DNA of 64,000 nucleotides from positions 46,810,001 to 46,874,000 of the forward strand of contig NC_086107.1 in the NCBI RefSeq assembly GCF_963921235.1, given 5' to 3'. The translations under genes and the position numbers were made by a program. This DNA comes from Mobula hypostoma (Eukaryota). The notes beneath the pieces were generated by a model. That model was not told the DNA's origin and searched no databases. It saw only the letters and a program-made list of their open reading frames with translations. Below, one piece after another: positions 1,778 through 56,534 of the stretch. Each line of letters opens with the position of its first letter. Positions within the stretch are counted from its first letter, which is position 1.

Positions 1778-2119
1778 AATCGTTGGATATGACCATTTTT
1801 AGAAGTCCAAATAATGTATTATTGAATACGGACATTACCTTGGAATGTAAAGTTACCGATTTTGGAACGCCACTTCTTGACCTATCAAACGTAGGTGTTA
1901 AGTGGTTGTATGGATCCCAAAGGAAAGAAATCTATATCTTTAATGCAGGAGATGCTATGGCTAAACGACACGGAGCCAAAATATTTGAAACTGAATTACG
2001 GAAAGGAGATGCTTCACTTTATCTTCCAAATATCCAATTAAATGAAGCAGGAGAATACATTTGTGTTGTACTTGTCACTCCTGACAGAGTGGAAAAGAGT
2101 TCACAAATTGTGGTCTTGG
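1778..2119 (+). CDS. NCR3LG1-like: IgV-set exon, B7-H6-like
   Basis: catttAG|AA acceptor and TTGG|GTAAGA donor; 342 nt. ITLEC..VKW..GDASLYLPNIQLNEAGEYICVVLVTP resembles human B7-H6 [26 protein letters not shown] (recalled). Confidence 0.9.
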
Positions 2120-5100
2120 GTAAGAGATTTCTAAAACATTACCTGTTGTGAACAGAGAACAGCACAGCATAGGAATAAGCCATTTGGCCCATGATGTTGT
2201 GCCAAACTAATTAAACTAGTAATTAGCTAGGAAGTTAAGTAATCCCTTCTGTCTACACAATGTCCTTACCCCTCAACTCTCTGCACATTCATGTGCCTAT
2301 CTCAGAGCTTTTTAAATGCATCTGTCACATCTGCCTCTGCTGCCCCCTCTGGCAGTGCATTGCAGGCACCCACTGCTCTCTGTCTCTTTTTAAAAGAAAG
2401 AAAACCTGCTGCTCACATCATCTTTAAACTTGCTCCCTCTCAGCTTTAGGCACTTTGACCCTGGGATAAAGACAATAGCTGTCTTTTCTATCTTTGCCTC
2501 TCATAATCTTATAAATTTCCATCAGGTTTTCCCTCACCTTGACACTCCAGGGAAAGCAACCCTAGTTCATTTGAATGGTTTTAATCTGAAACATCGACTG
2601 TCCATTTCCCTTCATAGATGCTGCCTGACCAAGCACGTTGTGTGTTGCTCCAAGTTTGTCCATCCTCTCCTTGTAGCCCATGCTCTTTTTCTGAGGCAAC
2701 ATCCCACTTATGTACCCTCTTCAAACCCTCCACTCTATTCCTATTATGGGGACAACCAGAACTGGAAGCAGTGCTCTAGATGTGGCATAAGCAGAGTTTT
2801 ATAAAGCTGCAAAAGTAACTTATCAACTCTTGACCTCAATGCCTCAACTAATAAAGACAAGTGAGCCATGTACTTCCTTACCACCCTATCAACCTGTGCT
2901 GTTTTAAGAGACTGTGGCCTTGGGTCACAAAATCCCTCTGTAGATCAATGTTGTTAAAGATTTTGCCATTAAAAGTGTACTATCCCTTCATATTTGAGTT
3001 TCCAAATTGTAAAACTTATTACTTAGCTGTATTAAACTCTACCTGCCATTTCTGTGCCCATGTCTATAACTGATCTATATCCTGCCATATCCTTTGGCAA
3101 TTGTCTACACTATCCATAATGCATATAATCTCTGCAGAATTACCTATGCACCTCTCCACTGTCTGTTAATTTATTATTTGGAGACTCTGGATCAGAAGGA
3201 ATAACTAATTTAAAAACTCTCTCATGGAACTGCATTGAATGTTGAACAAGCCAATTATCTTTCAGGAGTAATAGTAAAGGGAAATCCTGTGTTTTGGAGC
3301 AATAATTGAAGGAAGGAAAGTGGTACATTTTGTTTATGTAAACATAGCAATATCTTAGACTTGGCTTTAGATATTTATGATAATACACTTCATCCTATCT
3401 GACTTAAGGTTGGATTTGCCTTTTAATACAGCTAAGCCAAAGGTGCTTCTATCCACGCAACACATTACCATTCTGAATGGTACAGAGAAATCTGTCTGGT
3501 GTGATGCTACGGAATTTTATCCTCAGAAGCATGAAATCTTCTGGGAAAAGAGATCCAGAGGGAAAACTGAGAGATTGGAAAGACATGTCTGCACTGGAGC
3601 TGCAGTTTCTAATAATGATGGAACGTTTAATGTTTCCAGTAATATTAGAATTGAACCAACTCTGAATGATGATGGTAATGTATACAAGTGTACAGTGAGA
3701 CATCAGTCCCTTCCAGACGAACTTTCACAAAAGGTGAAACTCACGGTTGAAGGTATGTTCCATACTTTGAATAAATTGGGGATACTATGTAGCAATATTT
3801 GTAACAATGTTTTTTAAAAATGTTCCACTGATTTAAATCAAAGTTTCATTGTTTGTTATTTCACCACATAAAGATATTGGCTGAGAAGTTGAGTCATGCC
3901 TGCAAATAAACAGTAGGCTGGCACATTTTGAATTTCTACAGAGACTCTTGGTGACTGCCTGTTAGTAACTTGCTCATTGAATCATTTAACTGTTTGTGCC
4001 AATGCAACTGCTGATTCTTTCCATGCCATGAGTAATTAGTTTTGACCTTTATCGTACAATTTCATTTTCTGCACACCACTGTCTATCTTTCCTGTGCTTG
4101 ATTTGGTTGAGTAAGAGGGGCCCTGCCCTTCTGCCTCTGTCTTCACCAGTGGGTTAGATATTCTTCTAATATGTCCCAAAAATAATTGAGACAGGTTTGC
4201 AGGCATCGTTCTAGCCTTCTGTCACCACCCTTACCCAGGGCTAGTTTTTAATCTTTCTATTTTAATATTCAACAGCACAACTTGCAACTGATGTCATTTG
4301 CAAATAAGTTTAGTCAAAAGTTGGGATACTGGTAATTCTGAGCCCACCACTTATTCCAGATTATATGAAAAATAACAAAACTACAGAATGGAATTCCCAG
4401 AACATGACTTAAAGTGAAAATAAGTTGCACAATTATGGTTTCAATTTCTTGAAAATCTTTACGGGGTTTATGAATGGTGATTTATAATTTGCAAAAACTT
4501 GTAAGTGTCTCAAGATGATGAAGTTTATTAGTGTGTCTAAATGCTCATATTTTTGTTTTGGTTTTCTAAGTTTCAGAGCCTGAATCAGCTTCAACAGCAG
4601 CAGTGGGAGCTGCATTTGTAGGAGGATTTGTGTTATGTTTCCCGTTTGCTGCAGGACTACTTGCTTGTTGGTGGAGATTTCGAGCAGGTAATATGAAGAC
4701 AGTGAAATCATTTTGGTGTGTTGCAGTTTGTGCATTGAGTCATAGAAGATGCAGCTAAGAAACTGGCCATTTGGCTCAGTGTCCATGCCAGCTATCAAAC
4801 ACTGGTTTACAAAATCCCATTTTATTTTCCCCAATTTCTCACTAGCTCCCCCCAGGTTCTACCATTCACCTACACTTGGAGAAATTCACAGATTTCATTC
4901 ACCTATTGGCCTGCATATTTTTTTGTTGATGCGGAAGGAAACCAAAGCACCTGGAGGAAATTCCTGCATCATGGCCAGTGTGGAAACTCCACACAGGTAG
5001 TGCCAGAGGTTAGCATTGAACCTGGGTTGCTGGCTGTGAATTTGTATGGCTGTTCTGATTCTTTGAGTGTTTCTTGTATCTCGTCCCCAAATTGGGAAGT

Positions 5101-8100
5101 GATGATCTTTTTGCTTTGATTACAGCTAATCTGCAGTAATTGTACTCCTCCATTGGTGTTCAACAGAAAGTCTTGCTTGGTGTTTCTCCATTGAATGGAA
5201 TTTGATACTCTCGGTGCAACCTCCATTTAATTTTGATTTTTTTTTAATAATTATATTTCCCTTTAAACACATTTGAATTTGGAATTGATGCACAGTTCAT
5301 TTTTATGATGCAATAAATTACATCATTCAATTTTCAAAAATTCCTTTTGGATAATGTAGATTGATTTCCCCAATAAGCTTCTACCCTAGGAAAGTAGTTG
5401 AATTTCCTCCAGGTTCACCTGTCATCGGGCACTGTTTTAATAGCACAATGTGGAGCACCACTAAATGTGGCCCATTTCATGGGTTCTTATCCTTTTTTTT
5501 TTGTCACTGCATTTGCTGAATTTGCTCTTGACATGAAATGAGCATGAAGGAACACACAGAAAATGCTGGAGGAACTCAGCAGGCTAGCAGCATCTATAGA
5601 GAAGAGTAAATAGACAAAGTCTCAGCCTGAAACCCTTCTTCAGGATTGATGAAGAGTCTCAGCCCACAACATTGCTTGTTTACCTTTTTCCATGGATGCT
5701 GCCTGGCCTGCTGAGTTTTCCACGATTTTGTGTGTGTTGCTTGGATTATCAGCATCTGCAGATTTTCTCTTGTTTGTGAAATGCTTTATCTGCAGAGGAA
5801 TTTGGTGGGTAGAGAAAAAAATATGTTCACATATTTAAGAAATAAACTGTGCTAAGTGATGAATTTTCTAGGTTTTTCCTACCTAGATTTCTTTAAGAAC
5901 CTGCTTTAAAGTTCACCAACGGAAGCAATTAACAGAAATCTGAAATCAGTAGTTAAATTTATCAATCCACATTGATCTGATTGCATATTTGACTGTACAT
6001 GCATGTATACAAAACAATCATGTATACAATTTTAATGTTAGGGCAATTTCCTCCCATATTGTCCCTCTTCATTGCTTGTACATTGTGATGGAGATACAAC
6101 ATTAAGATTTTTACTCCCTTGGACGTAAGAAATTAAATAAATAAATAAATAAATAGCATTCCAGTGTTTTGGAATAAGCAAATTATTTAATTTTTTAAAA
6201 TACCCTTAATTCCACTGGAATCAATTTTTGTTCGTTTCACTATTTTAAGCCGTAATGTGCTGAATAATAATGGTACAAACTAATGGAAATTCTGACCTTG
6301 TCTGTTTACACTAGTTGTGTCTTATTTCTGTAATTCCAGAAAGGCAATAAAATCTGAGGATGCAAGAAAGTACATTTACATTGTTAAGCATTAATTACTT
6401 ATTTTGTTTTGACTAGTTCCTCCAAAAATTACTGGATGCAGTGAATATCAAGTTTTGAAACATCTTGAAGAAAGCGTAGTCACTTGGATGGTTAGCTCAT
6501 TTCGACCTTATGAGATTACAATTGTGATCTACGCAAAGAGGAAGCAGAATGATAAATGTCAGCTTCTGAATTGGAGCAACAAAGATGGGAAAATAAACTG
6601 CTGTCAGTATATATCAACAAATGGACCAGATTGTAATGAAACGAAAATCCTCATTCAGTCAGATGACAAAGATGCATCCTTTAGACCACAGATTTCTGAA
6701 TTTAAAATTAACACACGAAAGATTTGCAGTGTAGAAGTCAGTGTCGGAATATATCCAGATATTTCTCAAGATGATGGGGCGGAGTTAAGTATCCAAGTTC
6801 AACATCAAGCACTTAAAGAGCCTATAACTAAGACACTGACACTAGATGTTAAAGGAGGTAAATTGCAAACATTTTCTTTAATTATTAATTGCTGTCTTTT
6901 GTGGCTCCATTTTGAATGTCTTTCATTAACATATATGGTATTTGACATTGACGTGGATACACAAAATTCTGGAGGAACTCAGCAGGTCAGGCAGCAACTA
7001 TGGTGAAGAGTACTGACGGGTCACGGCCCAAAACATCAGCTGTTTTGCCCTCCATAGATATTGCCTGACCTGCTGAGCTTCTCCAGCATTTTGCATGTTT
7101 TGCTCTAGATTTCCAGCACCAGTAGAATCTCTTATGTCAATGATATGGATAGTTATGTTGAATACAGTTCTTCATCAGGTGGACTCAGTCATTAAGCATT
7201 TAAAACAATTCAGTATTTTTTTCTTTCTTTGCATTTCAGTTTGTGAGATTAATTTTTCATTTTCTCTTTTCTAAGTGCCACCTAAGGTTTTAAACATTTT
7301 GACGCCACCTCTCATCAAAGACAAGGAACCTGTGGCTTTGTCTTGTTCAGTCAGTGGATTTAAACCAAGACCATTAAGTATTATATGGCAACAAAAGAGA
7401 AAGAATAAAGATTTGGAAGAACTTGGCCGGTTGCAGCTGGACAACACGACAATCATACGCGATGACAAAAGGATGAATTTGAAGGCAAAGCATCACATCA
7501 GTGAAGTGGAGCATGAAGACAAAACTTACAGCATTGTTAGTGTATTAGTTATTGTGCCAAATATACAGCAAGACCAGAACTCGCAGTACTTATGTAGCAT
7601 ACTGCACCACTCCACTAACGACAAGCAAGAGAAAGAAATAACCCTAAGAATTACAGGTATACTATTATCTAAGCCTTGCAACAAGAAAGGATCCAGAATG
7701 CTTATTTCATTTGGAGGCTCCTCTAATGAATGCATTGTCTCGATGCCATATTTCTCTTACTGTTACAAGGTAGTAATAATGTCACAAGGGAAAAAATTTG
7801 AGATAATTTAAGAATATAACAAGCTAAATCAATAGGGTCGGATTGTACTGAAATTAATAAAGTAATTATATCTTTTGTCTTTTTCCAAAGTTTTCAAAGC
7901 TATAAGTAATTACTTACAGAAAGTGCCCAACTTTTGAAAATCTGCTCATGTTTCCAGCTCCACTGGGTAGCTGGTGAAGTGAGTAAGTAACACGTTTTTA
8001 GAAGAAGATTACTTTTTTGTTTCTGAACTTGTTTTTTCTACAATCAATTTGAAATTCTTTTTCGATCTTTTTATTAATTTCATAGAATGAAAACATAACA

Positions 8101-11100
8101 TAGCAATAATACAAATAGTAGGAGATACATTGTTACAGTTAAAATAAATAATTGTAAGACCAAATAGTGTAAATTGACAAAACTCCCAATTGTGTAGAAT
8201 AGGAATGAATAATACAAAGCAAAAAAAAAACTGGAAAAAAAACATGAAAAAGAAAAAAAACTAAATTAAAACCCTATCCCAAAAAAAAAACTAAACAGAA
8301 TTAGTCAACTAAACTAAAGACTTGGGCAGTACTAACAACTTAAAAATGGTAAAGAAGAAAGCCTTAGTGTCGACAACTCCGCACCTCTGAACCAGCAGTA
8401 CAGAGAGATAAAACAAGTTTGGAAATGGTCAACTTACATCAAATGAAAATGCTGAATAAATGGCCTCTAAGTTTTTTCAAATTTATTGGAAGGGTCATAA
8501 ACCGCACTTCTAATTTTTTACAAGTTCAAACACACCATAGCTTGTGAAAACCAATGGAATACAGTAGGAGGGTTCATCTCTTTCCAATACAGCAAAATAG
8601 ATTTCTAGCCATTAGAGTAAGAAATGCAATCATCCTACATGCTGAAGAGGTTAAATAACTTGAATCTATCATTGGTAATCCAAAGATAGCAGTAATTGGG
8701 TGAGGTAATAAGTCATAAATTCATAAAGGATGGATGTCTAATGATAACTGTTGGTACTAGGACATACCTTGTAATTTTTTGGCATCCATTTACTAAGACA
8801 GCAAACGAAGTGTCACAAATCCTACAGGCTAATTGTATTACTGCAAAGGAAGGTGAACATGGTGGATTTGATTGAACAGAGAATTCCTTAGAAAAGGAAA
8901 GTAAATTAAAATGGGTGAATTCATTGATTTGTAGGTAAAGAAATAAAAGTTAATACATAGATATAGTTAAGAGGAAAAAGTATAAAACTTTAAATTGCTA
9001 TTGATTGTAAAAACTAAAACTATTTGAACAAAACTAGCCACCTTATGACTATACTTATCAAGGATGTTTGACAGTATTTCACACAATTAAAAGGATAAAG
9101 GATAGTTTAAAGAGCTCTCCTGAATAATTCTATTTTTTAATTAAAATGTTAGCATTCCAACAAAAGACAGATTCAAATAACCAGTGCTTCCAACTACCAA
9201 GTGAAATATATAAACAATGTAAAATGACTGTCCTGATGATGAAAGCTAATTGCTTAACAAGAGACTAATGAGCAATCAACAACAGCTGAGAACCCACAAG
9301 AAAGCAGTGAGATCCAGTAATTAGAAATAAAATAATAATCCAAATCAGGAAAGACATGACAATAGTTTTTTTCATTGCTTTTAATAGTTTTCAGTCTTTA
9401 ACTACTTACTAAGAAATGCTTGTCAGTTTTGGTTTAAATTGTAATGTTAAGTTGCATATTTGGTTTAACCTATTTTTCTTCCTTTTTTATGTCTAGTTTC
9501 ATTGCCAAAGATCTCAGAAATTAAGGCAGATCCACCTTGCCCTGAAATAGGAAAGCCTTTAAAACTTTCCTGCACGGCTTATGGATTTTATCCAGAAGGA
9601 AATCAGATATTCTGGTTCAAAGATGATAGTAAAATTGAAGATGCATCACAAGCAGGAATAGTCACTGAAGAAAGTACAGTGGATTCCAGTGGTTTGTACT
9701 CACGATCATCCCATTGGACATTTAACCCAACGGCTCGTGATCATGGGAAAGAGTTCAAGATGCAATTCCTTCATTCTGAAACTTCAAGCAAGTCTGTCAC
9801 ATCCAGTTACTGTCTGCAATTAAGAGGTGAATACCCACTCTAACAAAGTCTCATGGCTGCTTTTCTATTCAATAAGATCATGCCAGGCTTTGTTTTTTTT
9901 TAATTGCAGTGTTATATCCCTGTACTGGCCCCACAGACTTTATTTTCCAATATCTTTCAATTTCTACCTTGAAGATGGCTTCATAGCTTCCTCACAGCTA
10001 TGAGTGATGATTTTTTTTCTCATATCCAAACTGTTAAGACACTGATACCTTCTTCTCGGTATATCAGCCAATTGAAACATCAACTACACATTAATTCCTG
10101 TCCAGACAGATAAGAGTTTTATACATTTCAATGAGATTGGCACTCTGTATTCTGATAAGACCACCAGTACATCATTTGCTGCTATCCCACAGAGCATAGC
10201 ATCTTGGCCACAGTTACATATACTGAGTGCCTAGAACTGGCATCTCAGTGAGAATAGCACTGTGATTGCCTCAGTGCACAGATCGGGTGCAGAGGAAGCC
10301 GTGGAGACAGTGTGCAGACTGTGCCTCTGATGGCTGGCACTGGAAAGTGCTGGATCAAGTAAGGTAACTAACCAGTGCAATGGTGCAGGGCTTGGGTGCA
10401 GCCCATTGCTGGGGAGTAACAGAGGCTGGTAATGTTACAGATTTTCAGAAATAAAAGGACGAGAGCACAATGTTCCCTCTAATTTGTATTGACCATTGTG
10501 TGCAAAAATCTTGCACTGCAATTTTGTTGCCCAGTGACAACAGCATTGAATTTTTAATTGGAAGTAAACCTGAAGCTATTCTAAGGATAATAAGCTACCA
10601 AGTCTTCTTTGTTATTTATTGTTTAAAAGAAATAAAATAATACACATCATTGAGTCAGAAACCAGAAAAGGGAATGTGATTATGTACGATGGTGAAATAT
10701 ACTTAACTTACCAACGTTGTAGTGGGTGACAATAATTTGTGCACAATTAAAATTCCTTTTTGCATTTGTAGCAAATGGTTATTGCTGGAATGTATGATTA
10801 ATAACAAAGCAGTGAAGCTCTAATACGCCCGATGTCACTGAGAAAATTTCTCAATCATTGTGGAAAGGATTTCACTCAGCTGATGCTTTCTGCTGCAGAA
10901 CAGCAGTTTAACGGGGCGGGGGAGGGATGGGTGTGGGAGGGGGTATCGCTGATGTTCAGATTTGATGACAAATCCTCGGTGTGAACTGTGTAATTTTTAA
11001 CTGGCACAGTTGGTGAAATGATTGAAACAATACTTTTACAGGAGGAGTTTAAATATCATAAAGAGTTGTAAGTATTGTGTAAAATGTTGGGGCCAGTTAG

Positions 11101-29100: not shown

Positions 29101-32100
29101 CTGATGTGTATTTGTGACTTCTGCATTGATAAATAAACTCCCTTATCACTATCACTCTTCTCTAATGAATGGGATGGAGGGAATGAGTGTGGTTCAGATC
29201 CTGAAATGCTGACGAGGCAAGATGGGTAAACTAGCATGTGAGCCACTGTGTTGAGAATAGCTAGAAAGGAGAAGCATAGTCCAGATGAGTGTGTTTAGAG
29301 TGGATATGATATTTTTAGTGTCTCTATGAGAACATATCGGGTTGATATGTGAATAAGAAGGCATATTTGGCATGGTACCCTTCATCAGAGCATTGAATGT
29401 AGGGTGCTAGGGCATTGCATTACAGTTATACAAGATGTTGGTAATGCTGCACATGCAGTATTGTGCACAGCTTTGTTTACTCTCTTATAGAAAATGTAAC
29501 ATTGGCTGGAAAGATTGCAAAGCAGATTCATGAGAATGTTGCCAGGACTCAAGGGGGTGAGTTATAGGGAGAGGCGGAGCAGGCTAGGACTTCATTTGTG
29601 GTGTATCGGAAACTGAGAGGTGATCCAAGAGGTGTATAATATCATATGGGCATAGTCAGGATGAATGTATGAATCTTTTTCCCAACAAGGGAATGGAAAA
29701 ACTAGGGATCATTAAGAGGAGATATTTGATATTAAATTTTATTGTTGATTGAGCCTGTTGGCATCATCCATGTTGATGCCATTGTCCCAGCACACCACTG
29801 CATGGAAGATTGTACTGGTGACATTAGCCTGTTAGAATAGGTGAAAGAGACGCCAGCATATTCCAAAGGGCCTTAGTCTTCTCAAGAGGTAGAGGCCACT
29901 CTGGCCCTTCCAGGACACAGCCGCTGTGTTGGCACTCCACTCAAGTCTGTCATCCAGGTGCACCCCCAGGTACTTGTAGGTCCTCATCATCAATTGTAAC
30001 AGGGAGCAATGCAGAGCACCAATCTGTTCATGTGGCACATTTCAATAAAGTTGTTTTAGATGACATGATCATTTATTTTAAACTTAATAGAATATTAATT
30101 TAACTAATTACTTCATATCAAACCTCATATTGCCTGAAACGGAGCGTTTTTTTCCTATGCCATGAATAAATAATTCTAAGTGGTTGGAGTTGTTTAACAT
30201 ATGGTTGGATGAAATAATTAACGTTTGAAATTTACAATAGCCAATTTGATTTGACGAAACTGAGGTTTTCTTAAACCACTTTCTTTTTTACCTACAGACC
30301 ATACCTCTAAGAAAGATGGCAGCAGTAAAGAAAAAAAGGAAGGTAAAGTGTTCAATTTTGAAGTTCCTGAACTGGACATGTTTCACTTGAAGTCCATCAT
30401 TAGGTCAATGTCGAATTTTACATTATTACACATGAGACAATCATTAGTATTTGGAATGGTGAATTTGAGCTGTTATCTACAAGACGCCAGCCCATTTCAA
30501 TGCTCTGTCAGTCTGCCACCTTCATTTCCTGGGTGTCCAAATTGAATAAATTTCCACAGTTCTTTGGATGATAAAAGTATACTCAAAGAACCAAATACAG
30601 ATCCGATCAAGCTTTGCAAAAGTGAACTTTTTCTGTCGTTTGTATACCTCTTATTTCTCCTGATCAGATGAGTAAAAATCAGTGGGATACTCATTTCCAG
30701 ACTCTTTGGCAACTTACGATGAAATATGAGCATTTGTCGAAGGGTCATGCGCTTTTCCCTTCGGCTCTGTCAGTGGTCCACTCTTCAAATATTCTAACCT
30801 AGGCTAGATTTTCATGGTAGATTTCTGGTGCCATCTTCCATGCCTGAACATGGCTGTAATTGCTTTAGACCTCCATTGTGAGTGCACAAATCATTTTCCC
30901 TTGAAAGGGAATTGAAAACAAGAGAGCATAGGATTAAGTTGAGAGGAGATATCTGATATTAAAAGTGATCCCGAACTAGTTCAAGGTAAAAAGCCTGCAA
31001 CATTTAGCATCTCCATGAAGGGCTATTTTCCTAAGAAAATCAAAGTAACATGATATAAAGATGGAAAGGCGCAAAAAAAGGTCATCCTGAGATTGCAGAA
31101 GATGGTCTGAAATTATCAATTACAAGCATAAAGTTTACTCCAGCAAAAAAAGATCATGGGTGTTGTATCAAATGTGAGCTGTTTCACGTAGAAAGAAAGA
31201 AAGTTCAAAAGAAATAATTCAAATTACACCTTCAAGGGAGGTCTTGTAGTAGATAGATATAGATACTTAATTGTTCCCAAAGGAATTTACAGTGTCAGAG
31301 TAGCATTAAAAGTGCAGAGATAAAAATATTAGAATGGAAATAGAAAAAATAAAAAATAAGTTACCTCAAACAGTCTAACAGGAGGGGGTCATTACCTACC
31401 CGCCGCTGGCTGACTCATTATTGATCCTAATGGCCGAAGGTAGAATGAATTTATATAGCACTCTTGTAACAGAACAGTTGTCTTAGTCTATTACTAAAAA
31501 TTCTCCTCTGTTCAGCTAAGGTGCCATACAGAGAGTGAGAATCATTGACCAGAATTGCCATGATTTTTCGTAGTGTCCATTGTTCTACCACAGCCTCCCG
31601 TGTGTCCATTTAGACTACTATGACAGAGCCAACCTTTCTGAACAGTTCATTGAGCCTGATGGCATCACCCGTGTTGATGCCATTGCTCTAGCACACGATC
31701 ACATAGAAGATTGTATGGCGACAGCAGACTGTTAGAACAGGTGAAAAGGAGGCCTGCATGCTCCAAAGGAGCTTAGTCTTCTCATGAGGTAGAGGCGACC
31801 CTGGCCCTTCTTGTACACAGCCTCTGTGCTGGTGCTCCACTCAAGTCTGTTATCCAGGTGCACCCCCAGGTACTTGTAGGTCCTCAGCACAGCCACGTGT
31901 GTTCATGTGACACATTTCAATAAAGTTGTTATGGATGCAATGATCATTTATTTTAAACTTAACAAGATCTTAATTTAACCATTTACTTCATATCAAACCT
32001 CACATTGACTGAAACTGTGTGTTTTTTTCCTAATGCTGTGGATAGATAATTCTAGGTGATTACAGTTTAACATCTGGTTAGGTGAAATGATCAACGTTTT

Positions 32101-35100
32101 AAATTTCAAGAGCTAATTTGATTTGACTAATGTCAACTTTTATTAAACTACATTTTTTTTACCTACAGACTCTGACTCTGCCCGTACGAAAGGTTCCAGA
32201 AGTTCCTCCTTTTCAAAAGGTACATTTAATGTCAGAGAAATGTATACAATCTACATCCTGAAATTCTTTTTTTTCCTCAACCATCCAGGAAAACAGGAGT
32301 GCCCCAAAGAATGAATGACAGTTAAATGTTAGAACCCCAAAGCCGCCCCAGCTCCCCACTCTCAAGCACAAGCCTCCTCCATCAGCAAAAAAATCATCAG
32401 CCCCCTCCACTGAACACTCAAGCTTGCAGCAAAGCATCGATAAAGATACAGACTTGCAGTACCCCAAGTTCTACTCGTTCAGTTAATTCAATATACCACA
32501 GGCTCTCTCTCTCTCTCTCTCTGCCAAATAAGGGAATAAAGAGATGTCCCTGTTTCACAGCGAGAGGGGAGACCTAACAAACAATTTTCTGATTTTATGA
32601 TGTTAAAAGTCCATTGCGTCACTTTTTCCAAGCTCTCTGCCCAAAGAACTCGGGTTTCTGGGCACATAGCCAAAGATCTTTCATCTCCCACGACACACCA
32701 ATGGCAGCAGTAGAGCAAAAGATAAAGGTAAAGTAATCGTTTTGGGAAGTTCCTGAACTGGAAATGGTTTACTTGAAACACATTATTGGGTCAAAGTAGA
32801 ATCTTATATTATTGCACATGAGATGTGCATTGCTATTTGGAATGGTGAATTTAAGCTGTTGTATACAAGCTGCCAGTCCATTTCAATGCTCTTGTCTGTC
32901 TGCTGCCTTCATTTCTTGGGTGTCCATATCCAGTAAATTTCCACTGATCTTTAGATGATGACAAGAATATACTGAAAGAGCCAAATACAATCTGATTAAT
33001 CTTTACAAAACTAAATTTCTCATGTAATTTGTATACCTCCTGTTTCTCCTGATCGTATAAGTAAATATCAATGAAGTAGTCATCTCCAAACAAACACTTG
33101 AGCACCTAACAGTGAGCTACTTTTCCCTTGTGGCTTTGTCATGTTGTCCACTCTTCAAATAGTCTAACATGGGCTGGATTTTTATGGTAGATTCTGGTGC
33201 CAACTTCCCGACATGAAAATGCTTGTAATCACTTTAGGCCTCCAAATTTAAAACAAGATCACTTCCCTTCTCTTCCACAAGGAAATAAGTACTGACTCTG
33301 TTGTCAAGAATCTTGCCAAGCATGCATCTCACACTTTCATCTGATGTGTATTTGTGACTTCTGCATTGATAAATAAACTCCCTTATCACTATCACTCTTC
33401 TCTAATGAATGGGATGGAGGGAATGAGTGTGGTTCAGATCCTGAAATGCTGATGAGGGTAGACGAGTAAACTGGTATGTGAACCACTGTGTTGAGAATAG
33501 CTAGAAAGGAGAAGCATAGTCCAGATGAGTGTGTTTAGAGTGGATATGATATTTTTAATGTCTCTATGAGAACATAACAGGTAGATAGGTAAATAAGAAG
33601 GCGTATTTGGCATGATGGCCTTTCATCAGAGCATTGAATGTAGGGTGCTAGGGCATTGCATTACAGTTGTACAAGATGTTGGTAATGCTGCACATGGAGT
33701 ATTATGCACAGCTTTGTTTACTCTCTTATAGAAAATAAAACATTGGCCGGGAAGAATGCAAAGCAGATTTTTGAGAATGTTGCTAGGACTCAAGGGGGTG
33801 AGTTATAAGGAGAGACTGAGCAGGCTAGGACTTTAATTGTGGTGTATCAGAGACTGAGAGGTGATCCTAGTGGTGTATAATATCATATGGGCAAGGTCAG
33901 GATTAATGCATGAATCTTTTTTCCCATCAAAGGGAATGGAAAAACTAGGGAGCATTGGTTTAAGTTGAGAGGAGATATCTGATATTAAAAGTGATCCAGA
34001 ACTACTTCAAGCTAAATAGCCTGCAACACTTAGCATCTTGAATGGCTGTGTTCCTGCGAAAATCAAAGTAACGTGGTATAAAGATGGAAAGACGCAAAAA
34101 CAGGTCATCGTGAAATTGCAGAAGAATGTCTGATTTCATCAATTACAAGCATAATGTTTACACCAGCAAAAGCAGACCATGGGAGTTGTATCAAATATGA
34201 GGTGGTTCACAAAGAAAGAAAGTTCAAAAGAAAGAATTCAAATTACGCCTTCGAGGGAGAACCTGTTGTAGTAGATAGATATAGATACTTTATTGATCCC
34301 AAAGGAAATTGCAGTGTCAGAGCAGCATTAAAAGTGCACAGATATAAATATTAGAAGGGAAAAAGTTACCTCAAACAGTCTAACAGGAGGGGTTCATCAC
34401 TTACCCGGCTGTCGGCTGTCTCATTATAGAGCTTAATGGCCAAAGGTAGAATGACTTTATAATCGCGTTCTTTGGAGCAGCATGGTTGTCTTGGTGGATA
34501 TATGGAATGCTCTGCCCAGAAGGCTGTGGAGGCCAAGTCTCTGGATGCTTTCAAGAAAGAGATGGATAGAACTCTTAAAGATAGTGGAATCAAAGGTTAT
34601 GGGGATAAGGCAGGAACTGAATACTGGTTGTGGATGATCAGCCATGATCACAGTGAATGGCAGTGCTGGCTCGAAGGGCCGAATTGCCTACTCCTGCACT
34701 TATCGTCTATTGTCTATTGTCTTGGTCTATTACCCAAAGTTCTCCTCTGTTCAGCCAATGTGGCGTACAGAGGGTGAGAATCATTGTCCAGAATTTCCAG
34801 GCTTTTCTGTAGTGTCCTTTTTGACAGCCTGTAGTGTGTTTAGTTGGACACCTATGAAAGAGCCAGCCTTTCTAAACAGTTTATTGAGCCTGCTGTCATT
34901 GCCCGTGTTGATGACATCGTCCTAGCACATCACCACAGAGAAGATCGTACTGGCGACAACAGACTGGTAGAAGAAGTGAAGGAGAAACCTGTACGCTCCA
35001 AAGGACCTCAGTCTCCTCAAGAAGTAGAAGCGACTCTGGCCCTTCTTGGACGCAGCCTGTGTGTTCGTGCTCCACTCAAGTCTGTCATCCAGGTGTAGCC

Positions 35101-38069
35101 TCAGCTGCTTGTAGGCCCTCGCCCCAGCAACCACCTCACCATCAATTGTAACAGAGAGCAGCACACCATACTAGTGTGTTTATGTGACACATTCCAATAA
35201 TGTTATAGATGCAATGATCATTTATTTTAAATTTAACAAAATATTAATTTTACCATTTACTCCGAATCAAGTCTCACATTGGCTGAACTGGTGTGTTTTT
35301 TTTCCCTATCGCTGTGGATAGGTAATTACAGTTGTTTAACATCTGGTTAGATGAGATAATTAGTGTTTTAAATTTCTAAGGGCTAATTTGATTTGACTAA
35401 TGTTGCATTTTATTAAACTACTATTTTTCCCTTACAATGCTGTCAAGGAAAATGACAGCAATGAAGCAACAAGTGAAGGTAAAGTGTTCATTTACTTGAA
35501 ATCCATTATTGGGGCAAAGTAGAATTTTAGATTATTACACATGAGACAAGCATTAGTATTTGGAATGGTGAATTTGAGCTGTTGTCTACAAGCTTCCAGT
35601 CCATTTCAATGGACATGTCTGATTGCTGCCTCATTTCTTGGGTGCCCATATCCAATAAACTTCCTCTGTTCTGTAGATGATAACAAGAATACACTGAAAC
35701 AGCCAAACATAGATCTGATTAAGTTTTACAAAATTAAATTTCTCACGTCATTTGTATACCAACTGTTTCTCCTGATTATATATTGTAAATATCAATGAAG
35801 TAGTCATCTCCAAACAGACACTTGAGCACCTTCTGGCGAACTACTTTTCCCTTGAGGCTCTATCATGTTGTCAACTTTTCAAATATTCTAACTTAGACTG
35901 GATTTTTATCGTAGATTCTGATGCTAACTTCCATACCTGAACATGCTTGTAATCACTTCAGGCCTCCATTTTAAAACAGGATCTCTTCCCTTCTCTTCCA
36001 CAAGGCAATGAATACTGACTCTGTTGTAAAGAATCTGGCCAAGCATGCATCCCACACTTCCATCTGATACATATTCGTGACATCTGCGTTAACACCCAAA
36101 CTCCTTTATTGCTGTATGTCTCTTCTCCTGCGAATGGGATGGAGAGAATGAGTGTGGTTCAGATCATGAAATGCTGACAAGGCAAGACGGGTAAACTGGC
36201 ATGTGAGCCACTGTGTTGAGAATTGAGGTGAGTTATAGGGAGAGGGTGAGCAGACTAGCACTTTATTGTTGGAGTATCAGTGACTGAGAGGTGATCTTAG
36301 AGGTGTTTAATATCATATGGGGCATAGTTAGGATGAATACACAAATCTTTTTTCCCACCAAAGGGTATTGAAAATTAGCAAGTATGTTAAGTGTGAGAGG
36401 AGAAACATTTTCAAGGGACCTGAGGCAGAGAATGATACATAGTATATCAAATAAGCTGCCGGAGGAAGTGTTGGAGCAGATAAAATAATAACATCTAAAA
36501 GACATTTGAACAGGTACATAGCTATGTACGTACATCTATTGATGCTTCTGGACACATCTTCAGTGATGATCCTGGAATCATCGGGTGTTTCGGGTCTTTC
36601 AACATCATACAGCCTCCTCCAGGTGACCCAGCTGGGGCTGATCAGACCCCAGCTTGTGTCCAGATGGCTAGCTACTTATGACTCCATGTCTCCCCTCTTT
36701 TGAGCCACAGCCATCTTGAGGCCCTCTCTACCGCATCGGTGGTACTGTGGATGGCTCTCCTCTTCCTCTCTCCCTCGATTTCCAAAATGCTGAAGGCTCT
36801 AACTAAAGAATGGGCTACGAATCTCCTACAACCAACCTCCACTGGGAGACACCTCACTCTCCATCCAGCCTGCTGACAGCTGCTGACCAGTCCTGCGTAC
36901 TTGGAGAGCTTCCTTTCAAAGTCCTCTTCCAAGATATCTTCCCATGGGACTGTCAGCTCCAGCAGCACCACTTGCTTAGTCAACTCAGACACTAGGACAA
37001 TGTCTGGTCACGGGGTGGTGGCTGCGATGTGGTTGGGGAACTTCAGCTGCCCTTCGAGGTCCACCAACAGCTACCAGTCCCTTGCAGAGGTCAGAATGCC
37101 TGCAGATGTTCTTTTGGCAGGTATTGGCTGCTCCCCAGCTCTGACAGAGGCAATGGTCTGCTTGGAGGGTCGAGACCGCTTCGCCCACTCAACTCTTGCG
37201 CTGACGGCTTCAGCGATGGTCTTCAGGACCTGATCATACCTCCACCTGTACCGTCCCTCACCAAGTGCCCTTGCACAGCCGCTGAGGATGTGCTTCAGGG
37301 TTCCTCGCTTGGAGCACAGTGGGCACGCAGATGACTCTGCCTTGCCCCATGTGTGCAGGTTTGATGGGCTTGGAAGCACATCGTACACTGCCTGGATGAG
37401 AAATTGGATGCGGTGTGGTCCGGCTTTTAGATAGTGTTGCAGGGATATACATTCAATGTGGGCAGATGTGTCTAACTTCCGGCATCTTGGTCAGTGTTGA
37501 TGAATTGAGACAAAGCCCTGTTCCTATGCTGTATGATTCCATGATTCTATGCCATGACAGCAGATATTTCATCTGGATGATATTCCATATCCACCCAACT
37601 GCAGTAGTTCAGGTGGAAAATGGTAATTTAGTATAAACATTTGAATTTGTAAGAATTAAGATAAGGACTTTGCAAGTGCAGTAATATATATTGACTCACA
37701 TATGTCTTTATTTTTGAAATGCCTTTAAGGTTCTCATGTTATTTCTCGTAAATTCTTTTTTTCAGCAGATGTATGGCAGAAGGTTTCAGAAATAAAGTGC
37801 CCCACAAAAAGTCCTAAAATTGGTCAACCAGTAACTCTTTCTTGCGATGTTAAAGGATGTGCCCTCGAAGAGGCTCGTATCTTCTGGTACAGACATGCTT
37901 ATCCTTTTGTGAAAAGGAGTTTGTTACAAACAAGCCATTTCAAAATGCTAGCGGTTTCACCACTGAGCTAACTTATACATCAAAAGCAAATGATAAATGT
38001 CACATCCAAGTTCAAATTGAATTTAAGTTGGAAGAACATATGAAACAGTATGACTTGATATTAATTTGA
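1778..38069 (+). CDS. NCR3LG1-like: Multi-exon B7-H6 (NCR3LG1)-like gene: V-C1-TM followed by a C1-set Ig array; 5'-incomplete (leader exon not found)
   Basis: All internal exons have AG/GT boundaries, are phase 1-1 and have lengths divisible by 3; they join in frame. Whether all post-TM exons splice into one transcript is inferred. Confidence 0.7.
2150..3140 (-). mobile_element. Degenerate CR1 LINE 3' fragments in intron
   Basis: CR1-type 3' end and ORF2 C-terminal remnants in antisense, similar to 58035-58860; boundaries approximate. Confidence 0.6.
3432..3752 (+). CDS. NCR3LG1-like: IgC1-set exon (extracellular), B7-H6-like
   Basis: tacAG|CT acceptor and GAAG|GTATGT donor; 321 nt. WCDATEFYP..IFW..DGTFNVSS..YKCTVRHQSL fits the C1 pattern, both Cys intact. 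Confidence 0.92.
4577..4687 (+). CDS. NCR3LG1-like: Transmembrane exon (EPESASTAAVGAAFVGGFVLCFPFAAGLLACWWRFRA)
   Basis: Not in the ORF track. tttcAG|AG acceptor (in-frame alternative 6 nt upstream, exon start 4571) and GCAG|GTAATA donor; 111 nt, phase 1-1; ~23 hydrophobic residues followed by RFR. Confidence 0.85.
4790..5040 (-). mobile_element. V-SINE (HE1-like) remnant
   Basis: Reverse complement contains TTTCCTCCAGGTGCTTTGGTTTCC, a V-domain-like core; similar copies at ~54030-54300 and ~60430-60780. Confidence 0.55.
5545..5780. repeat. Penelope-derived inverted-repeat remnant
   Basis: aatgctggaggaactcagcaggc... pairs with ...gcctggcctgctgagttttccacgattttgtgtg; the same ends flank the GIY-YIG element at 56535; a similar copy lies at ~6950-7130. 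Confidence 0.55.
6417..6857 (+). CDS. Post-TM C1-like Ig exon A (both canonical Cys lost, long insert)
   Basis: gactAG|TT acceptor and GGAG|GTAAAT donor; 441 nt open. VPPKI..VTWMVSSFRP..LSIQVQHQALKEPITKTLTLDVKG keeps the C1 pattern with W and I at the Cys positions. Confidence 0.8.
7276..7656 (+). CDS. Post-TM C1-set Ig exon B
   Basis: ttctaAG|TG acceptor and ACAG|GTATAC donor; 381 nt. LSCSVSGFKP..IIW..YLCSILH. Confidence 0.85.
8065..9020 (-). mobile_element. L1 LINE 3' fragment (duplicated at ~22590-23540)
   Basis: Minus strand encodes an L1 ORF2 C-terminus (KFEKT*RPFIQHFHLM*) followed by an A/T-rich 3' UTR; boundaries approximate. Confidence 0.65.
9497..9826 (+). CDS. Post-TM C1-like exon C, copy 1
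   Basis: gtctAG|TT acceptor and AGAG|GTGAAT donor; 330 nt. LSCTAYGFYP..FWFK..EFKMQFLH, with the F-strand Cys replaced by Met. Confidence 0.85.
11919..12248 (+). CDS. Post-TM C1-like exon C, copy 2
   Basis: Same splice sites; 330 nt, open. Confidence 0.85.
14386..14715 (+). CDS. Post-TM C1-like exon C, copy 3
   Basis: Protein identical to copy 2; splice sites intact. Confidence 0.83.
16853..17182 (+). CDS. Post-TM C1-like exon C, copy 4
   Basis: Protein identical to copy 2; splice sites intact. Confidence 0.83.
19320..19649 (+). CDS. Post-TM C1-like exon C, copy 5
   Basis: Protein identical to copy 2; splice sites intact. Confidence 0.83.
21942..22166 (+). pseudogene. 5'-truncated duplicate of exon B fused to a CR1 remnant
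   Basis: Near-identical to 7432-7656; donor kept but acceptor and the first ~52 codons are missing. Confidence 0.85.
24022..24351 (+). CDS. Post-TM C1-like exon C, copy 6 (chimeric)
   Basis: gtctAG|TT and AGAG|GTGAAT sites intact; 330 nt, open. Confidence 0.83.
26058..26102 (+). CDS. 45-nt mini-exon (DHTSKKDGSSKEKEE)
   Basis: Polypyrimidine tract ttctttttttacctacAG and GAAG|GTAAAG donor; phase 1-1, open. Confidence 0.65.
26693..26984 (+). pseudogene. Decayed C1 pseudo-exon (EISDIKSDP..GYFPKKIKVT*YKDG..FTPAKNHG..KLHLQG)
   Basis: Homologous to exon C; Trp codon changed to TGA, frameshifts, acceptor replaced by CR1 sequence. Confidence 0.7.
26990..27640 (-). mobile_element. Rex1/Babar-like non-LTR 3' fragment (also ~29750-29990, ~31245-31890)
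   Basis: Minus-strand YKYLGVHLDNRLEWS..LRRL motif (ORF track 29832..30038 for the sister copy). Confidence 0.65.
27914..27964 (+). CDS. 51-nt mini-exon (DSDSARTEGSRSSSFSK)
   Basis: tttttacctacAG acceptor and AAAG|GTACGT donor; phase 1-1, open. Confidence 0.55.
30298..30342 (+). CDS. 45-nt mini-exon (DHTSKKDGSSKEKKE)
   Basis: Duplicate of 26058-26102 with intact splice sites. Confidence 0.62.
30946..31240 (+). pseudogene. Decayed C1 pseudo-exon, copy 2
   Basis: Duplicate of 26693-26984 with the same TGA at the Trp position. Confidence 0.7.
32169..32219 (+). CDS. 51-nt mini-exon (DSDSARTKGSRSSSFSK)
   Basis: Duplicate of 27914-27964; AAAG|GTACAT donor. Confidence 0.52.
33972..34258 (+). pseudogene. 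Decayed C1 pseudo-exon, copy 3
   Basis: EISDIKSDPELLQAK*..VTWYKDG..FTPAKADHGSCIKYEVVH..EFKLRLRG; stop and frameshifts, Trp retained. Confidence 0.7.
34260..35150 (-). mobile_element. Rex1/Babar-like fragment with a nested CR1 3' end
   Basis: ORF 34922..35164 has YKQLRLHLDDRLEWSTNT..LRRLRSFG; a CR1 tail sits at ~34480-34720. Confidence 0.65.
35437..35478 (+). pseudogene. 42-nt mini-exon remnant ((D)AVKENDSNEATSE) lacking its acceptor G
   Basis: Context matches the other mini-exons and the donor GAAG|GTAAAG is intact, but cttacAG reads cttacA. Confidence 0.55.
36530..37510 (-). mobile_element. 5'-truncated RLE-type non-LTR retrotransposon (HERO-like, R2 superclade)
   Basis: CPLCSKRGTLKHILSGC zinc knuckle, GRYRW, then PDIVLVSE..LLELTVPWE..RKLSKY restriction-like endonuclease; inserted inside a CR1 3' remnant. 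Confidence 0.8.
37769..38069 (+). CDS. Terminal C1-like exon D with a 1-nt frameshift at 37905-37908
   Basis: ttttttcAGcAG acceptor (alternative start 37766). DVWQKVSEIK..VTLSCDVKG..IFWYRHAYPF, then in the next frame CEKEF..GFTTELTY..KQYDLILI*; as assembled it stops at TAA 37969-37971. Confidence 0.7.
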
Positions 38070-41039: not shown

Positions 41040-41664
41040 CGGCCCAAAGGCTTGTATAACCCTCATGGGCGCCTCGCTATACTACACACAAAACATAATA
41101 ATAATACCCAAAACTAACAATCAACCAGTTACTACCCAGTGAGAGTAGTCCACCAGCCTCCCAGTGCTCCAAAAACCATCTGGGGAGTAGTAGTTATGAA
41201 GCTGGACCCCTACTTTCCTGATCTTATTTACTGAATGCTGGATATGATCAGCCAGGTGAGTAATGTTCCCAGACTCATTGGGGATGTAGGTGCAGCATTT
41301 CTGACCAATCACAGCACAGCTGTCACCCATCACTGCAAATAGGTAGTCCAAGGCCATGGGATTTTGCAAGGCCACCAGCTGAACAGGCATCAGTTCAGCT
41401 GACACTTTGCTCAGTGCACCCTCTGTAGGTTTGAATGCTGAGGCTGTCCCATTGGTAGTGTCTCCATGAGAAAAGCCATGCGTATCAGTTGCCAGGACAG
41501 CCTGGTTGTACCATACAGGGGAAAGGCTATCAGACATCCCACCCTGCAAAAACTCATTTGAGGGAGATAGCACCACCATTCCCATATTCCCCCCCCCCAC
41601 CCCGGGTCGACCTCCAGGGCGCATGTATATGGGACATTTGATTATGAAAGAGCACAACAATTTA
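41040..41664 (-). pseudogene. Endogenous retrovirus env relic (TM subunit)
   Basis: LQNPMALDYLFAVMGDSCAVIGQKCCTYIP is an immunosuppressive domain plus CX6CC; the anchor VVTG*LLVLGIIIMFCV* is broken by a stop; the 5' part runs into an N gap. Confidence 0.85.
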
Positions 41665-41811
41665 NNNNNNNNNNNNNNNNNNNNNNNNNNNNNNNNNNNN
41701 NNNNNNNNNNNNNNNNNNNNNNNNNNNNNNNNNNNNNNNNNNNNNNNNNNNNNNNNNNNNNNNNNNNNNNNNNNNNNNNNNNNNNNNNNNNNNNNNNNNN
41801 NNNNNNNNNNN
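41665..41811. other. Assembly gap (N run)
   Basis: 147 N. Confidence 1.
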
Positions 41812-56016: not shown

Positions 56017-56534
56017 GTAAAACGAGGGACGGGGTCTCTGATCCAATGATCTAGGCTTCGGGGTTGAGGGTTATGCCGAGGCTGCTGCATGGACTTCCGG
56101 GATTTACAGGCACGATTAAGGCAAAGTGAATCTCCCACTAAATCACAGATTAGATTCTCATATCGGTTTCTATATTTTTAAGTGTATGGAAATATTTCTA
56201 TATGTTTACCCTTCCCGATTTTGGGTGCCCCCGAGGTCATTGACTAGAGGCAGGTACTGAATTGGGTATCGTTGTTTACATCCCCTTCCCAGGAGATCAG
56301 TAAGACATGAGAAATACAAGGTCAGTGTAGGTCTCAGGAGTTGCTCCAATGGTGTCATCTGATTTAAATTTACTCGCTTGTAAAGTTCACATGGATAATT
56401 AAGGCTTGTCTGCATCTAATATCTTATGGATGGCCTATAGATACTTGGGCTTTTCACATACCTTAGGTTATTTCATATTCTCTTGTCCCTTTCCTCCACA
56501 CTAAAAAGAAACAACAAGACTGGATGTTTTTCAT

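What the first reader, a model, noticed from the sequence alone, without database searches (positions are those of the whole stretch)
4577..38069. B7-H6-like protein whose cytoplasmic tail is an array of up to nine C1-set Ig domains
Seen: V, C1 and a clear TM exon ending in WWRFR, followed on the same strand by nine C1-like exons (A, B, C x6, D), all joined through phase-1 splice sites. No second leader, V or TM exon was found among them. Known: C1-set domains are normally extracellular (Ig, TCR, MHC, tapasin, B7-H6); human B7-H6 has a Gag-like tail instead. Inference: a type-I protein of ~1350 aa with ~1100 aa of Ig-fold scaffold inside the cell, which could be a signalling or docking platform or a decoy for cytosolic pathogen factors. 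I cannot confirm novelty; non-mammalian B7-H6 tails need a literature check.
Basis: partly seen in the sequence, partly recalled or inferred. Interest (0 to 1): 0.88.

Follow-up and report, generated by a model that had tools for sequence, protein, structure and literature searches.

The report
Ray B7-H6 gene with Ig-domain tail
This is a stingray copy of the NK-cell ligand gene B7-H6, and like B7-H6 of nearly all non-mammalian jawed vertebrates it carries a long chain of antibody-type (C1-like) domains after its only membrane anchor, so that chain is predicted, though not shown, to lie inside the cell.

Summary
The observation largely holds. On the + strand, V, C1, TM, A, B and six C exons all have AG/GT borders and lengths divisible by three. 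They join into one 1,193-codon open frame. The ninth exon (D) carries a 1-nt deletion.

The architecture is not a local oddity. More than 80 database proteins from rays, sharks, chimaera, coelacanth, lungfish, bichir, sturgeon, amphibians, turtles, squamates and crocodilians show V-C1, one strong TM, then 480-1,160 aa of Ig domains with no second TM. Among them are nurse-shark "B7H6" (QTT61906.1) and RefSeq "NCR3LG1" of reptiles.

Features that favour a cytoplasmic tail:
- N-glycosylation sequons occur only at chance level and none is conserved.
- The canonical disulfide is missing from four of the seven tail domain types.

Features that complicate this reading:
- RefSeq isoforms in two species skip exactly the TM exon, which would give a secreted all-Ig form.
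- Domains B and X keep both cysteines.

This copy has amplified the disulfide-less C exon in a 2,467-bp accordion, a repeat the scan had already noted (s1-144082). It has also lost the X exon.

No paper in the searchable library describes the Ig tail. Four key subscription papers could not be read.

The parts
1778..2119 (+). V-set exon of the ectodomain (phase 1-1); the leader exon lies upstream of the window
   Evidence: Pfam V-set, E 2.6e-7. Best PDB hit is human NCR3LG1/B7-H6, E 2e-13. 79% identical to the Hemitrygon orthologue. Splice sites.
3432..3752 (+). C1-set exon of the ectodomain
   Evidence: Pfam C1-set, E 4e-11. B7-H6 is among the top PDB hits, E 1e-14. 90% identical to the orthologue.
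4571..4687 (+). Stalk plus transmembrane exon, ending in WWRFRA. It has tandem acceptors at 4571 and 4577, and the orthologue's VSEPES start fits 4571.
   Evidence: Sequence and splice sites. 58% identical to the TM exon of P0001. It is the only hydrophobic segment in the joined frame.
6417..6857 (+). Tail exon A. It is a C1-like Ig domain with no canonical cysteines and a roughly 20-residue disordered insert. It starts about 5 residues after the TM.
   Evidence: No Pfam hit. The AF2 model is a beta sandwich with pLDDT 83. Best folds are beta-2-microglobulin, TCR C and MHC C1 domains. 76% identical to the orthologue.
7276..7656 (+). Tail exon B, a C1-set domain that keeps both canonical cysteines
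   Evidence: Pfam C1-set, 33 bits against a cutoff of 21. 87% identical to the orthologue.
9497..9826 (+). Tail exon C, copy 1. It is a C1-set domain whose F-strand Cys is replaced by Met.
   Evidence: Pfam C1-set. 84% identical to the orthologue. Splice sites.
10005..20266 (+). Near-perfect 2,467-bp tandem array holding C copies 2-5 (11919-12248, 14386-14715, 16853-17182, 19320-19649). All four copies encode the same protein.
   Evidence: Repeat families D1-D12. Periodicity scan. Two intronic substitutions distinguish the units.
21942..22166 (+). B', a 5'-truncated copy of exon B with no usable acceptor. It marks the start of a duplicated block, 21942-24376, copied from 7432-9851.
   Evidence: blastn finds 98.2% identity over 2,436 bp. 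tblastn and acceptor scan.
24022..24351 (+). Tail exon C, copy 6
26693..34354 (+). Three decayed pseudo-exons (about 26693-27073, 30946-31329, 33972-34354) in roughly 4.24-kb repeats. They are homologous to tail domain E2 of other species and carry in-frame stops and frameshifts.
   Evidence: tblastn to Narcine P0002 residues 888-984. Three-frame translations. Alignment.
35436..35480 (+). Remnant of the small acidic linker exon. It has a GT donor but no in-phase acceptor.
   Evidence: tblastn to the P0001 linker. Sequence.
37766..38066 (+). Last exon D, an Ig domain followed by the stop codon. It is broken by a 1-nt deletion at about 37909/37910. Read in the incoming frame it stops at 37968.
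   Evidence: Two-frame tblastn hits to P0001 residues 851-917 and 905-957. Translations. Sequence context.

Best explanation
The locus is a stingray member of the B7-H6 (NCR3LG1) gene family. It has the architecture that is ancestral for jawed vertebrates.

Architecture:
- A V-C1 ectodomain, the part that in mammals is the ligand of the NK receptor NKp30.
- One stop-transfer transmembrane helix with basic residues on its C-terminal side.
- About five residues later, a chain of C1-like Ig domains, each encoded by its own phase-1 exon.

Topology (inferred): the protein has an N-terminal signal peptide in its orthologues and only one membrane span. In the TM-containing isoform the Ig chain should therefore face the cytoplasm. 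There it would fold without disulfides or glycans.

Copy-number change: every exon is phase 1-1, so exons can be duplicated, lost or skipped without breaking the frame. This copy has amplified exon C to six copies through a 2,467-bp tandem repeat plus a 2.4-kb block duplication. It has lost domain X, retains three dead E2 exons, and has a frameshift in the last exon.

Shown here: gene structure, family membership, conservation of the architecture, the Ig folds, and the cysteine and sequon patterns.

Inferred: the cytoplasmic location. Also inferred is the proposed role, in which the tail acts as a membrane-proximal scaffold or sensor that couples the cell's internal state to display of the NKp30 ligand. 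That would parallel the intracellular B30.2 domain of butyrophilins.
For: Gene structure:
- Eleven exons join into one 1,193-codon frame.

Identity:
- The best solved relative of V and C1 is human B7-H6.
- The tail finds nurse-shark 'B7H6' QTT61906.1 and RefSeq 'NCR3LG1' of alligator, gharial, turtles, geckos, lizards, a snake and axolotl.

Architecture conserved:
- A search with exon C against 1.8 billion representatives gives 20 hits below 1e-30. They are 750-1,260 aa long with 4-9 Ig matches each.
- Hydropathy scans of more than 80 of these proteins show one strong TM at about residues 230-330, a tail of 480-1,160 aa and no second TM.
- Transcript-derived V9K7L7 of elephant shark has the same order.

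Folds:
- The AF2 model of the Hemitrygon orthologue has a TM helix at 302-322. Domain A starts at 328 and all tail domains have pLDDT 85-94.
- Exon A of the window is a C1-like sandwich.
- All tail domain types are homologous to each other and to the gene's own C1, with hhalign probability 94-99.9% for all pairs but A-D.

Topology clues:
- Sequons are 1.46 times the shuffle expectation in ectodomains, with two conserved sites. In tails they are 0.97 times, with none conserved.
- Control extracellular Ig arrays score 1.24 times.
- Both canonical cysteines are present in 19 of 19 sequences for V and C1. In the tail, domain C has 0/19 at the F-strand position, A 3/19, E1 4/17, and E2 1/18 at the B-strand position.

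Plasticity:
- Hypanus sabinus LOC132397552 has four near-identical X-C pairs.
Against: - No experiment bears on topology.
- RefSeq isoforms of Hemitrygon (X6) and Microcaecilia (X3) delete exactly the TM exon, 38 and 37 aa. That predicts a secreted form in which the same domains would be luminal.
- Domains B and X keep both canonical cysteines almost invariantly, X in 19/19. The tail's cysteine content (3.1%) is higher than the ectodomain's.
- C1-set domains are not known from the cytosol (my own knowledge).
- This particular copy may not make a full product. D is frameshifted, B' is truncated, X and the leader exon are not in the window, and there are no transcript data for this species.
Confidence: 0.7

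Rival explanations
1. The Ig array works outside the cell. The TM exon is a cassette, and the biologically important long product is the TM-skipped, secreted V-C1-A-B-...-D protein. Under this view, TM-containing long transcripts are minor, or their tails are irrelevant or degraded.
For: - Exact TM-exon skipping occurs in RefSeq isoforms of two distant species.
- Both cysteines of domains B and X are conserved.
- Every exon is phase 1-1, so skipping is always in frame.
- C1-set domains are otherwise extracellular or luminal (my own knowledge).
Against: - Six of seven Hemitrygon isoforms include the TM exon. So do the transcript-derived elephant-shark protein, the nurse-shark B7H6 record and nearly all of the more than 80 models.
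- The tail has no conserved glycosylation site and only chance-level sequon density.
- Four domain types have had an unpaired or absent canonical cysteine since before the split of cartilaginous and bony fish. That is unusual for secreted C1 domains.
- In-frame skipping of symmetric exons is expected as splicing noise.
Confidence: 0.2
2. This window's copy is a decaying paralogue (pseudogene or half-gene) of a B7-H6 cluster. The exon array records recent unequal crossing-over rather than a working protein of about 1,300 aa.
For: - Frameshift in D.
- Truncated B' without an acceptor.
- Three dead E2 exons.
- The linker exon lacks an in-phase acceptor.
- X, the one domain invariant elsewhere, is absent.
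- Related stingrays carry 2-3 paralogues on one chromosome.
Against: - V through the sixth C exon form an unbroken 1,193-codon frame with canonical splice sites.
- Exons are 76-90% identical to the Hemitrygon orthologue, which is no faster in the tail than in the ectodomain.
- Products without D exist as RefSeq models in relatives: Hemitrygon X7 and Hypanus P0187.
Confidence: 0.3
3. The post-TM exons belong to a separate neighbouring gene (for example a UrIg-like multi-C1 gene), or the array is an assembly artefact.
For: - Phase-1 compatibility alone proves nothing among Ig exons.
- UrIg2 also has near-identical duplicated C exons.
- Four C copies encode identical proteins.
Against: - The same exon order is found inside single proteins of dozens of species, including a transcript-derived one.
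- No leader or V exon lies between TM and A.
- UrIg2 (PDB 9dmx) appears only as a fold-level match, not a sequence match.
- The repeat units differ by substitutions at two sites, so the assembler resolved separate copies.
Confidence: 0.03

Closest known systems
Human B7-H6 (NCR3LG1), ligand of NKp30
   Same: It has a V-set plus C1-set ectodomain, and both are the best solved sequence relatives of the window's V and C1 exons. It is a single-pass type-I protein. Reptile and amphibian proteins that RefSeq names NCR3LG1 share the window's tail.
   Different: The human protein is 454 aa with a Gag-like cytoplasmic tail (my own knowledge). Here the tail is 8 or more C1-like Ig domains. No mammal or bird appeared among tail homologues.
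Nurse-shark B7H6 (QTT61906.1, 1,092 aa) and Hemitrygon akajei XP_072905588 (958 aa)
   Same: They have the same order, V-C1-TM-A-B-...-C-...-D, with 45% (tail) and 76-90% (per exon) identity.
   Different: Both have domain X, and the shark also has E1 and E2. Each has a single C and an intact D. The window has six C exons, no X, dead E2 exons and a broken D.
UrIg and UrIg2 of elasmobranchs (PMC12227049)
   Same: A non-rearranging V is followed by up to 9-11 C1 domains, each on its own exon. Near-identical exon duplicates occur, and the domain number varies between species.
   Different: UrIg has a VJ-type V domain, and its TM lies after the C array, so that array is extracellular. There is no sequence-level match to the window's exons.
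Butyrophilins (BTN3A1 type): B7-like V-C ectodomain, TM, intracellular B30.2 domain
   Same: The resemblance is in how it may work. A B7-family ectodomain read by a lymphocyte receptor is joined through one TM to a folded beta-sandwich domain inside the cell. That domain senses the cell's state (my own knowledge).
   Different: The intracellular module here is a chain of C1-like Ig domains, not B30.2/SPRY. No ligand of the tail is known.
Cytosolic Ig arrays of titin, obscurin and MyBP-C
   Same: These are chains of Ig-fold domains that fold without glycans and mostly without disulfides.
   Different: They are I-set domains in soluble muscle proteins. Here the domains score as C1-set, with I-set below threshold, and are tethered to the membrane.

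Membership tests
B7-H6 / NCR3LG1 | V-set plus C1-set ectodomain closest to B7-H6 among solved proteins | tested here: met
   Pfam V-set and C1-set. NCR3LG1 is the top hit for V (E 2e-13) and among the top hits for C1 (E 1e-14). Next for V are CD276 and TAPBPR.
B7-H6 / NCR3LG1 | Type-I single-pass membrane protein (signal peptide, one TM after C1) | tested here: inconclusive
   A single strong TM exon is present. The leader exon is not in the window. Orthologues have signal peptides.
B7-H6 / NCR3LG1 | Homology to proteins named B7H6/NCR3LG1 in other vertebrates | tested here: met
   The closest full-length relative, P0001, finds nurse-shark B7H6 QTT61906.1 (E 4e-176). The alligator NCR3LG1 tail finds the same shark and ray proteins. 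No formal tree was built.
B7-H6 / NCR3LG1 | Binds NKp30 (NCR3) | not testable with these tools
   This needs a binding assay. No NCR3 gene is in the window.
B7-H6 / NCR3LG1 | Gag-like cytoplasmic tail (a feature of the mammalian protein only, not of the family) | tested here: not met
   No Gag family appears in the Pfam scan of the tail exons. The tail is made of Ig domains. Reptile and amphibian NCR3LG1 also lack the Gag tail.
C1-set Ig domain (tail exons) | Match to Pfam C1-set above the gathering score, or a C1-type fold | tested here: met
   B scores 33.1 bits and C 29.9-31.9 bits against a cutoff of 21. A has no Pfam hit, but its AF2 model matches beta-2-microglobulin, TCR C and MHC C1 domains. 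D is inconclusive because the exon is broken.
C1-set Ig domain (tail exons) | Canonical B-strand and F-strand cysteine pair with the C-strand Trp | tested here: not met
   The pair is met in B only. In the window, A has Trp and Ile at the two cysteine positions, and C has Cys and Met. Across the family the F-strand Cys of C is 0/19. The Trp is kept.
C1-set Ig domain (tail exons) | Extracellular or luminal location | not testable with these tools
   The location is predicted to be cytoplasmic from the single TM and from the sequon and cysteine patterns. TM-skipped isoforms would be luminal.
UrIg / UrIg2 | VJ-type V domain, and TM after the C-domain array | tested here: not met
   The V exon matches B7-H6, not antigen-receptor V domains. 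The TM lies before the array. UrIg2 (9dmx) is only a fold-level hit. Features of UrIg are taken from PMC12227049.
Butyrophilin | Intracellular B30.2/SPRY domain | tested here: not met
   No SPRY or B30.2 hit appears in any tail exon. The resemblance is functional only.

The most novel reading that the evidence does not exclude
C1-set Ig domains are the hallmark fold of Ig, TCR, MHC, tapasin and beta-2-microglobulin. In the ancestral B7-H6 of jawed vertebrates they may truly operate in the cytosol. There they would form a membrane-tethered, copy-number-plastic chain that senses or scaffolds intracellular events and controls display of the NKp30 ligand. Mammals would later have replaced this module with a captured Gag domain.
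Probability: 0.35. Interest if true: 0.9.

Novelty: new variant of a known kind. Interest (0 to 1): 0.68.

Why it matters
B7-H6 is studied almost only in humans, where its tail is Gag-like and its function is unclear. The data here indicate that the Ig-domain tail is the ancestral state, and that it is conserved from chimaeras to crocodilians.

If the tail is cytoplasmic, it would be the first C1-type Ig array inside a cell. It would also make B7-H6 a candidate inside-out stress sensor comparable to the butyrophilins.

The topology can be tested directly with tagged constructs of proteins already in public databases.

The window adds a case of rapid change in domain number within that tail, seen again as four X-C pairs in Hypanus sabinus.

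Tried and rejected
- UrIg or UrIg2 as the identity of the array. This was rejected because there is no VJ domain, the TM is on the wrong side, and there is no sequence-level match.
- A separate downstream gene. This was rejected because the order is conserved within single proteins, including a transcript-derived one.
- An assembly artefact for the 2,467-bp repeat. This is unlikely because the units differ by two substitutions and relatives show similar expansions.
- A search for the leader exon, domain X, domain E1 and intact linker exons in the window. Only a linker remnant was found.
- The Tandem Repeats Finder missed the 2.5-kb repeat because its period limit is 500.
- Literature. Seven full-text searches found no description of an Ig-domain tail of B7-H6 and no mention of the accession numbers.
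- The four most relevant papers are not held and could not be read. They are Flajnik 2012 PMC3709836, Ohta and Flajnik 2015 PMC4594805, Kinlein 2021 PMC8273117 and Flajnik 2023 PMC10530332. Prior description cannot be excluded.
- A word search of the scan's own notes returned nothing.
Full report
**What is in the window**

The window is AT-rich vertebrate DNA full of repeats. The + strand carries a V-set exon at 1778-2119 and a C1-set exon at 3432-3752. A stalk plus transmembrane exon follows, from 4571 or 4577 to 4687.

The TM exon encodes a 26-residue hydrophobic stretch followed by WWRFRA. Its two acceptors lie 6 nt apart. The orthologue's VSEPES start fits the one at 4571.

The V and C1 exons find human B7-H6 (NCR3LG1) as their best solved relative, at E 2e-13 and 1e-14. 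For V, CD276 and TAPBPR come next.

Downstream on the same strand lie these exons:
- Exon A, 6417-6857.
- Exon B, 7276-7656.
- Six copies of exon C, at 9497, 11919, 14386, 16853, 19320 and 24022, each 330 nt.

All eleven exons have AG/GT borders and lengths divisible by three. Joined in phase 1 they give an unbroken 1,193-codon frame.

The last exon, D (37766-38066), matches its orthologue in two different frames. A single base is missing at about 37909/37910, where the orthologue has an Asp codon. The site is not a homopolymer run. In the incoming frame the exon stops at 37968.

Copies 2 to 5 of C lie in 2,467-bp units that are identical except at two intronic positions. The four copies encode the same protein. 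These substitutions argue that the assembler resolved real copies.

A block at 7432-9851 is duplicated at 21942-24376 with 98.2% identity. Its breakpoint falls inside exon B, which leaves a 5'-truncated B' without an acceptor.

Three further Ig-like units, at about 26.7, 31.0 and 34.0 kb, carry in-frame stops and frameshifts. One of the stops replaces the conserved Trp codon. They correspond to a tail domain (E2) that is intact in other species.

A remnant of a small acidic linker exon sits at about 35.44 kb without an in-phase acceptor. The leader exon and the domain I call X are not in the window.

**The architecture is a conserved family trait**

A HMMER search with exon C against 1.8 billion representative proteins returned 20 hits below 1e-30. 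They are 750-1,260 aa long with 4-9 Ig matches each. The best hit is XP_072905588 of the stingray Hemitrygon akajei (P0001). It is 76-90% identical to the window exon by exon and reads signal peptide, V, C1, TM, A, B, X, C, acidic linker, D, stop.

The same order is found in other rays, sharks, the elephant shark, coelacanth, lungfish, bichir, sturgeon, frogs, salamanders, caecilians, turtles, squamates and crocodilians.

RefSeq names the reptile and axolotl proteins NCR3LG1. The nurse-shark protein QTT61906.1 (1,092 aa) was named B7H6 by its depositors. UniProt V9K7L7 of the elephant shark differs from the genome-predicted protein at a few residues, so I take it to be transcript-derived. It contains the TM and the whole tail.

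No mammal or bird appeared among the tail homologues.

Hydropathy scans of more than 80 of these proteins show one strong TM at about residue 230-330. A tail of 480-1,160 residues follows, with no second TM. The exons after the TM therefore belong to the same gene, and this has been so since before cartilaginous and bony fish split.

**Folds**

AlphaFold2 was run on the Hemitrygon orthologue with a 24-sequence alignment. It gives a TM helix at 302-322 and the first strand of domain A at 328. Every tail domain is a confident beta sandwich with pLDDT 85-94, and the acidic linker at 815-861 is disordered.

Exon A of the window has no Pfam hit. It still models as an Ig sandwich with pLDDT 83, carrying a disordered insert of about 20 residues. 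Its best matches are beta-2-microglobulin, TCR C and MHC C1 domains. Exons B and C pass the Pfam C1-set gathering score.

Profile-profile comparison shows that all tail domain types are homologous to each other and to the gene's own ectodomain C1. A is closest to B. X, C, E1 and E2 form a second group, and X is the tail domain closest to C1.

**Inside or outside the cell?**

The cytoplasmic reading rests first on standard topology rules: a signal peptide, one TM, and basic residues directly after it. Two independent sequence patterns agree with it.

The first pattern is N-glycosylation sequons:
- Ectodomains: 1.46 times the shuffle expectation, with two positionally conserved sites.
- Tails: 0.97 times, at half the density, with no conserved site.
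- Control extracellular Ig arrays taken from the same hit list: 1.24 times.

The second pattern is the canonical cysteine pair:
- V and C1 keep both cysteines in 19 of 19 sequences.
- Tail domain C has 0/19 at the F-strand position, A has 3/19 and E1 has 4/17.
- E2 has 1/18 at the B-strand position.
- D is mixed.

These losses are shared by cartilaginous and bony vertebrates, so they are ancient.

Three points count against a simple answer. Domains B and X keep both cysteines almost invariantly. The tail is not cysteine-poor. RefSeq lists isoforms in Hemitrygon (X6) and the caecilian Microcaecilia (X3) that delete exactly the TM exon, and these would be secreted with all domains luminal.

Because every exon is symmetric, such skipping may be noise, but it may also be a real second product. 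I put the cytoplasmic location of the main isoform at about 0.7.

**How it may work**

The ectodomain is the family's NKp30-ligand module. That rests on homology, and binding was not tested.

For the tail I propose a membrane-proximal chain of Ig domains that scaffolds or senses cytosolic partners and so couples the state of the cell to ligand display. The parallel is the intracellular B30.2 domain of butyrophilins, which I cite from my own knowledge. This is inference only.

The tail is conserved about as well as the ectodomain between the window and Hemitrygon, which argues for function.

**Plasticity and the state of this copy**

Stingrays carry two or three paralogues on one chromosome. 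Hypanus sabinus LOC132397552 (1,408 aa) has four near-identical X-C pairs. The window has amplified C alone.

The loss of X, the dead E2 exons, the truncated B' and the frameshift in D suggest that this copy is partly decaying. Products that end before D do exist as RefSeq models in relatives.

**Novelty**

The sequences are public, and one is named B7H6 by specialists. I found no text describing an Ig-domain tail in seven full-text searches.

The four most relevant papers are not held in the library. I therefore rate this a new variant of a known kind, with the caveat that prior description cannot be excluded.

Noticed in passing
window 4571 and 4577: The TM exon has two in-phase AG acceptors 6 nt apart. 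Use of the upstream one adds Val-Ser, as in the Hemitrygon orthologue (VSEPES).
   Followed up: partly
window 10121, 10501 and the same positions in each 2,467-bp unit: Two intronic substitutions (A/G and T/C) vary between the tandem units; the T/C site alternates from unit to unit. They are the only differences between otherwise identical copies.
   Followed up: yes
window 41121-41660 (-), next to the N run at 41665-41811: A 179-aa ORF resembles the transmembrane subunit of a retroviral envelope protein (it has a CC..Y.PNESG-type motif). It is cut off by a masked or gap stretch.
   Followed up: no
window 46858-50374 (+): A series of ORFs looks like the endonuclease and reverse transcriptase of a LINE-type retrotransposon, broken by frameshifts.
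   Followed up: no
window 36672-37388 (-): Transposon-like ORFs lie on the opposite strand, inserted just upstream of exon D. GC content rises to 0.46 here.
   Followed up: no
window 5556-5720, 6960-7100 and 56520-56580: These are copies of a short interspersed repeat that shares the core GGAGGAACTCAGCAGG. One lies directly after exon A.
   Followed up: no
window 62761-62913: A 54-bp tandem repeat with 2.8 copies and 87% matches.
   Followed up: no
P0004 (Amblyraja radiata XP_032894416) and P0196 (Leucoraja erinacea): In skates the ectodomain itself is duplicated as V-C1-V-C1 before the TM, which lies at about residue 494. Both sides of the membrane therefore change domain number.
   Followed up: partly
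Family alignment, region before domain D: Cartilaginous-fish proteins have a disordered, strongly acidic linker before the last Ig domain. In Hemitrygon it comes from small repeated exons that are alternatively used (isoforms X1-X5).
   Followed up: partly
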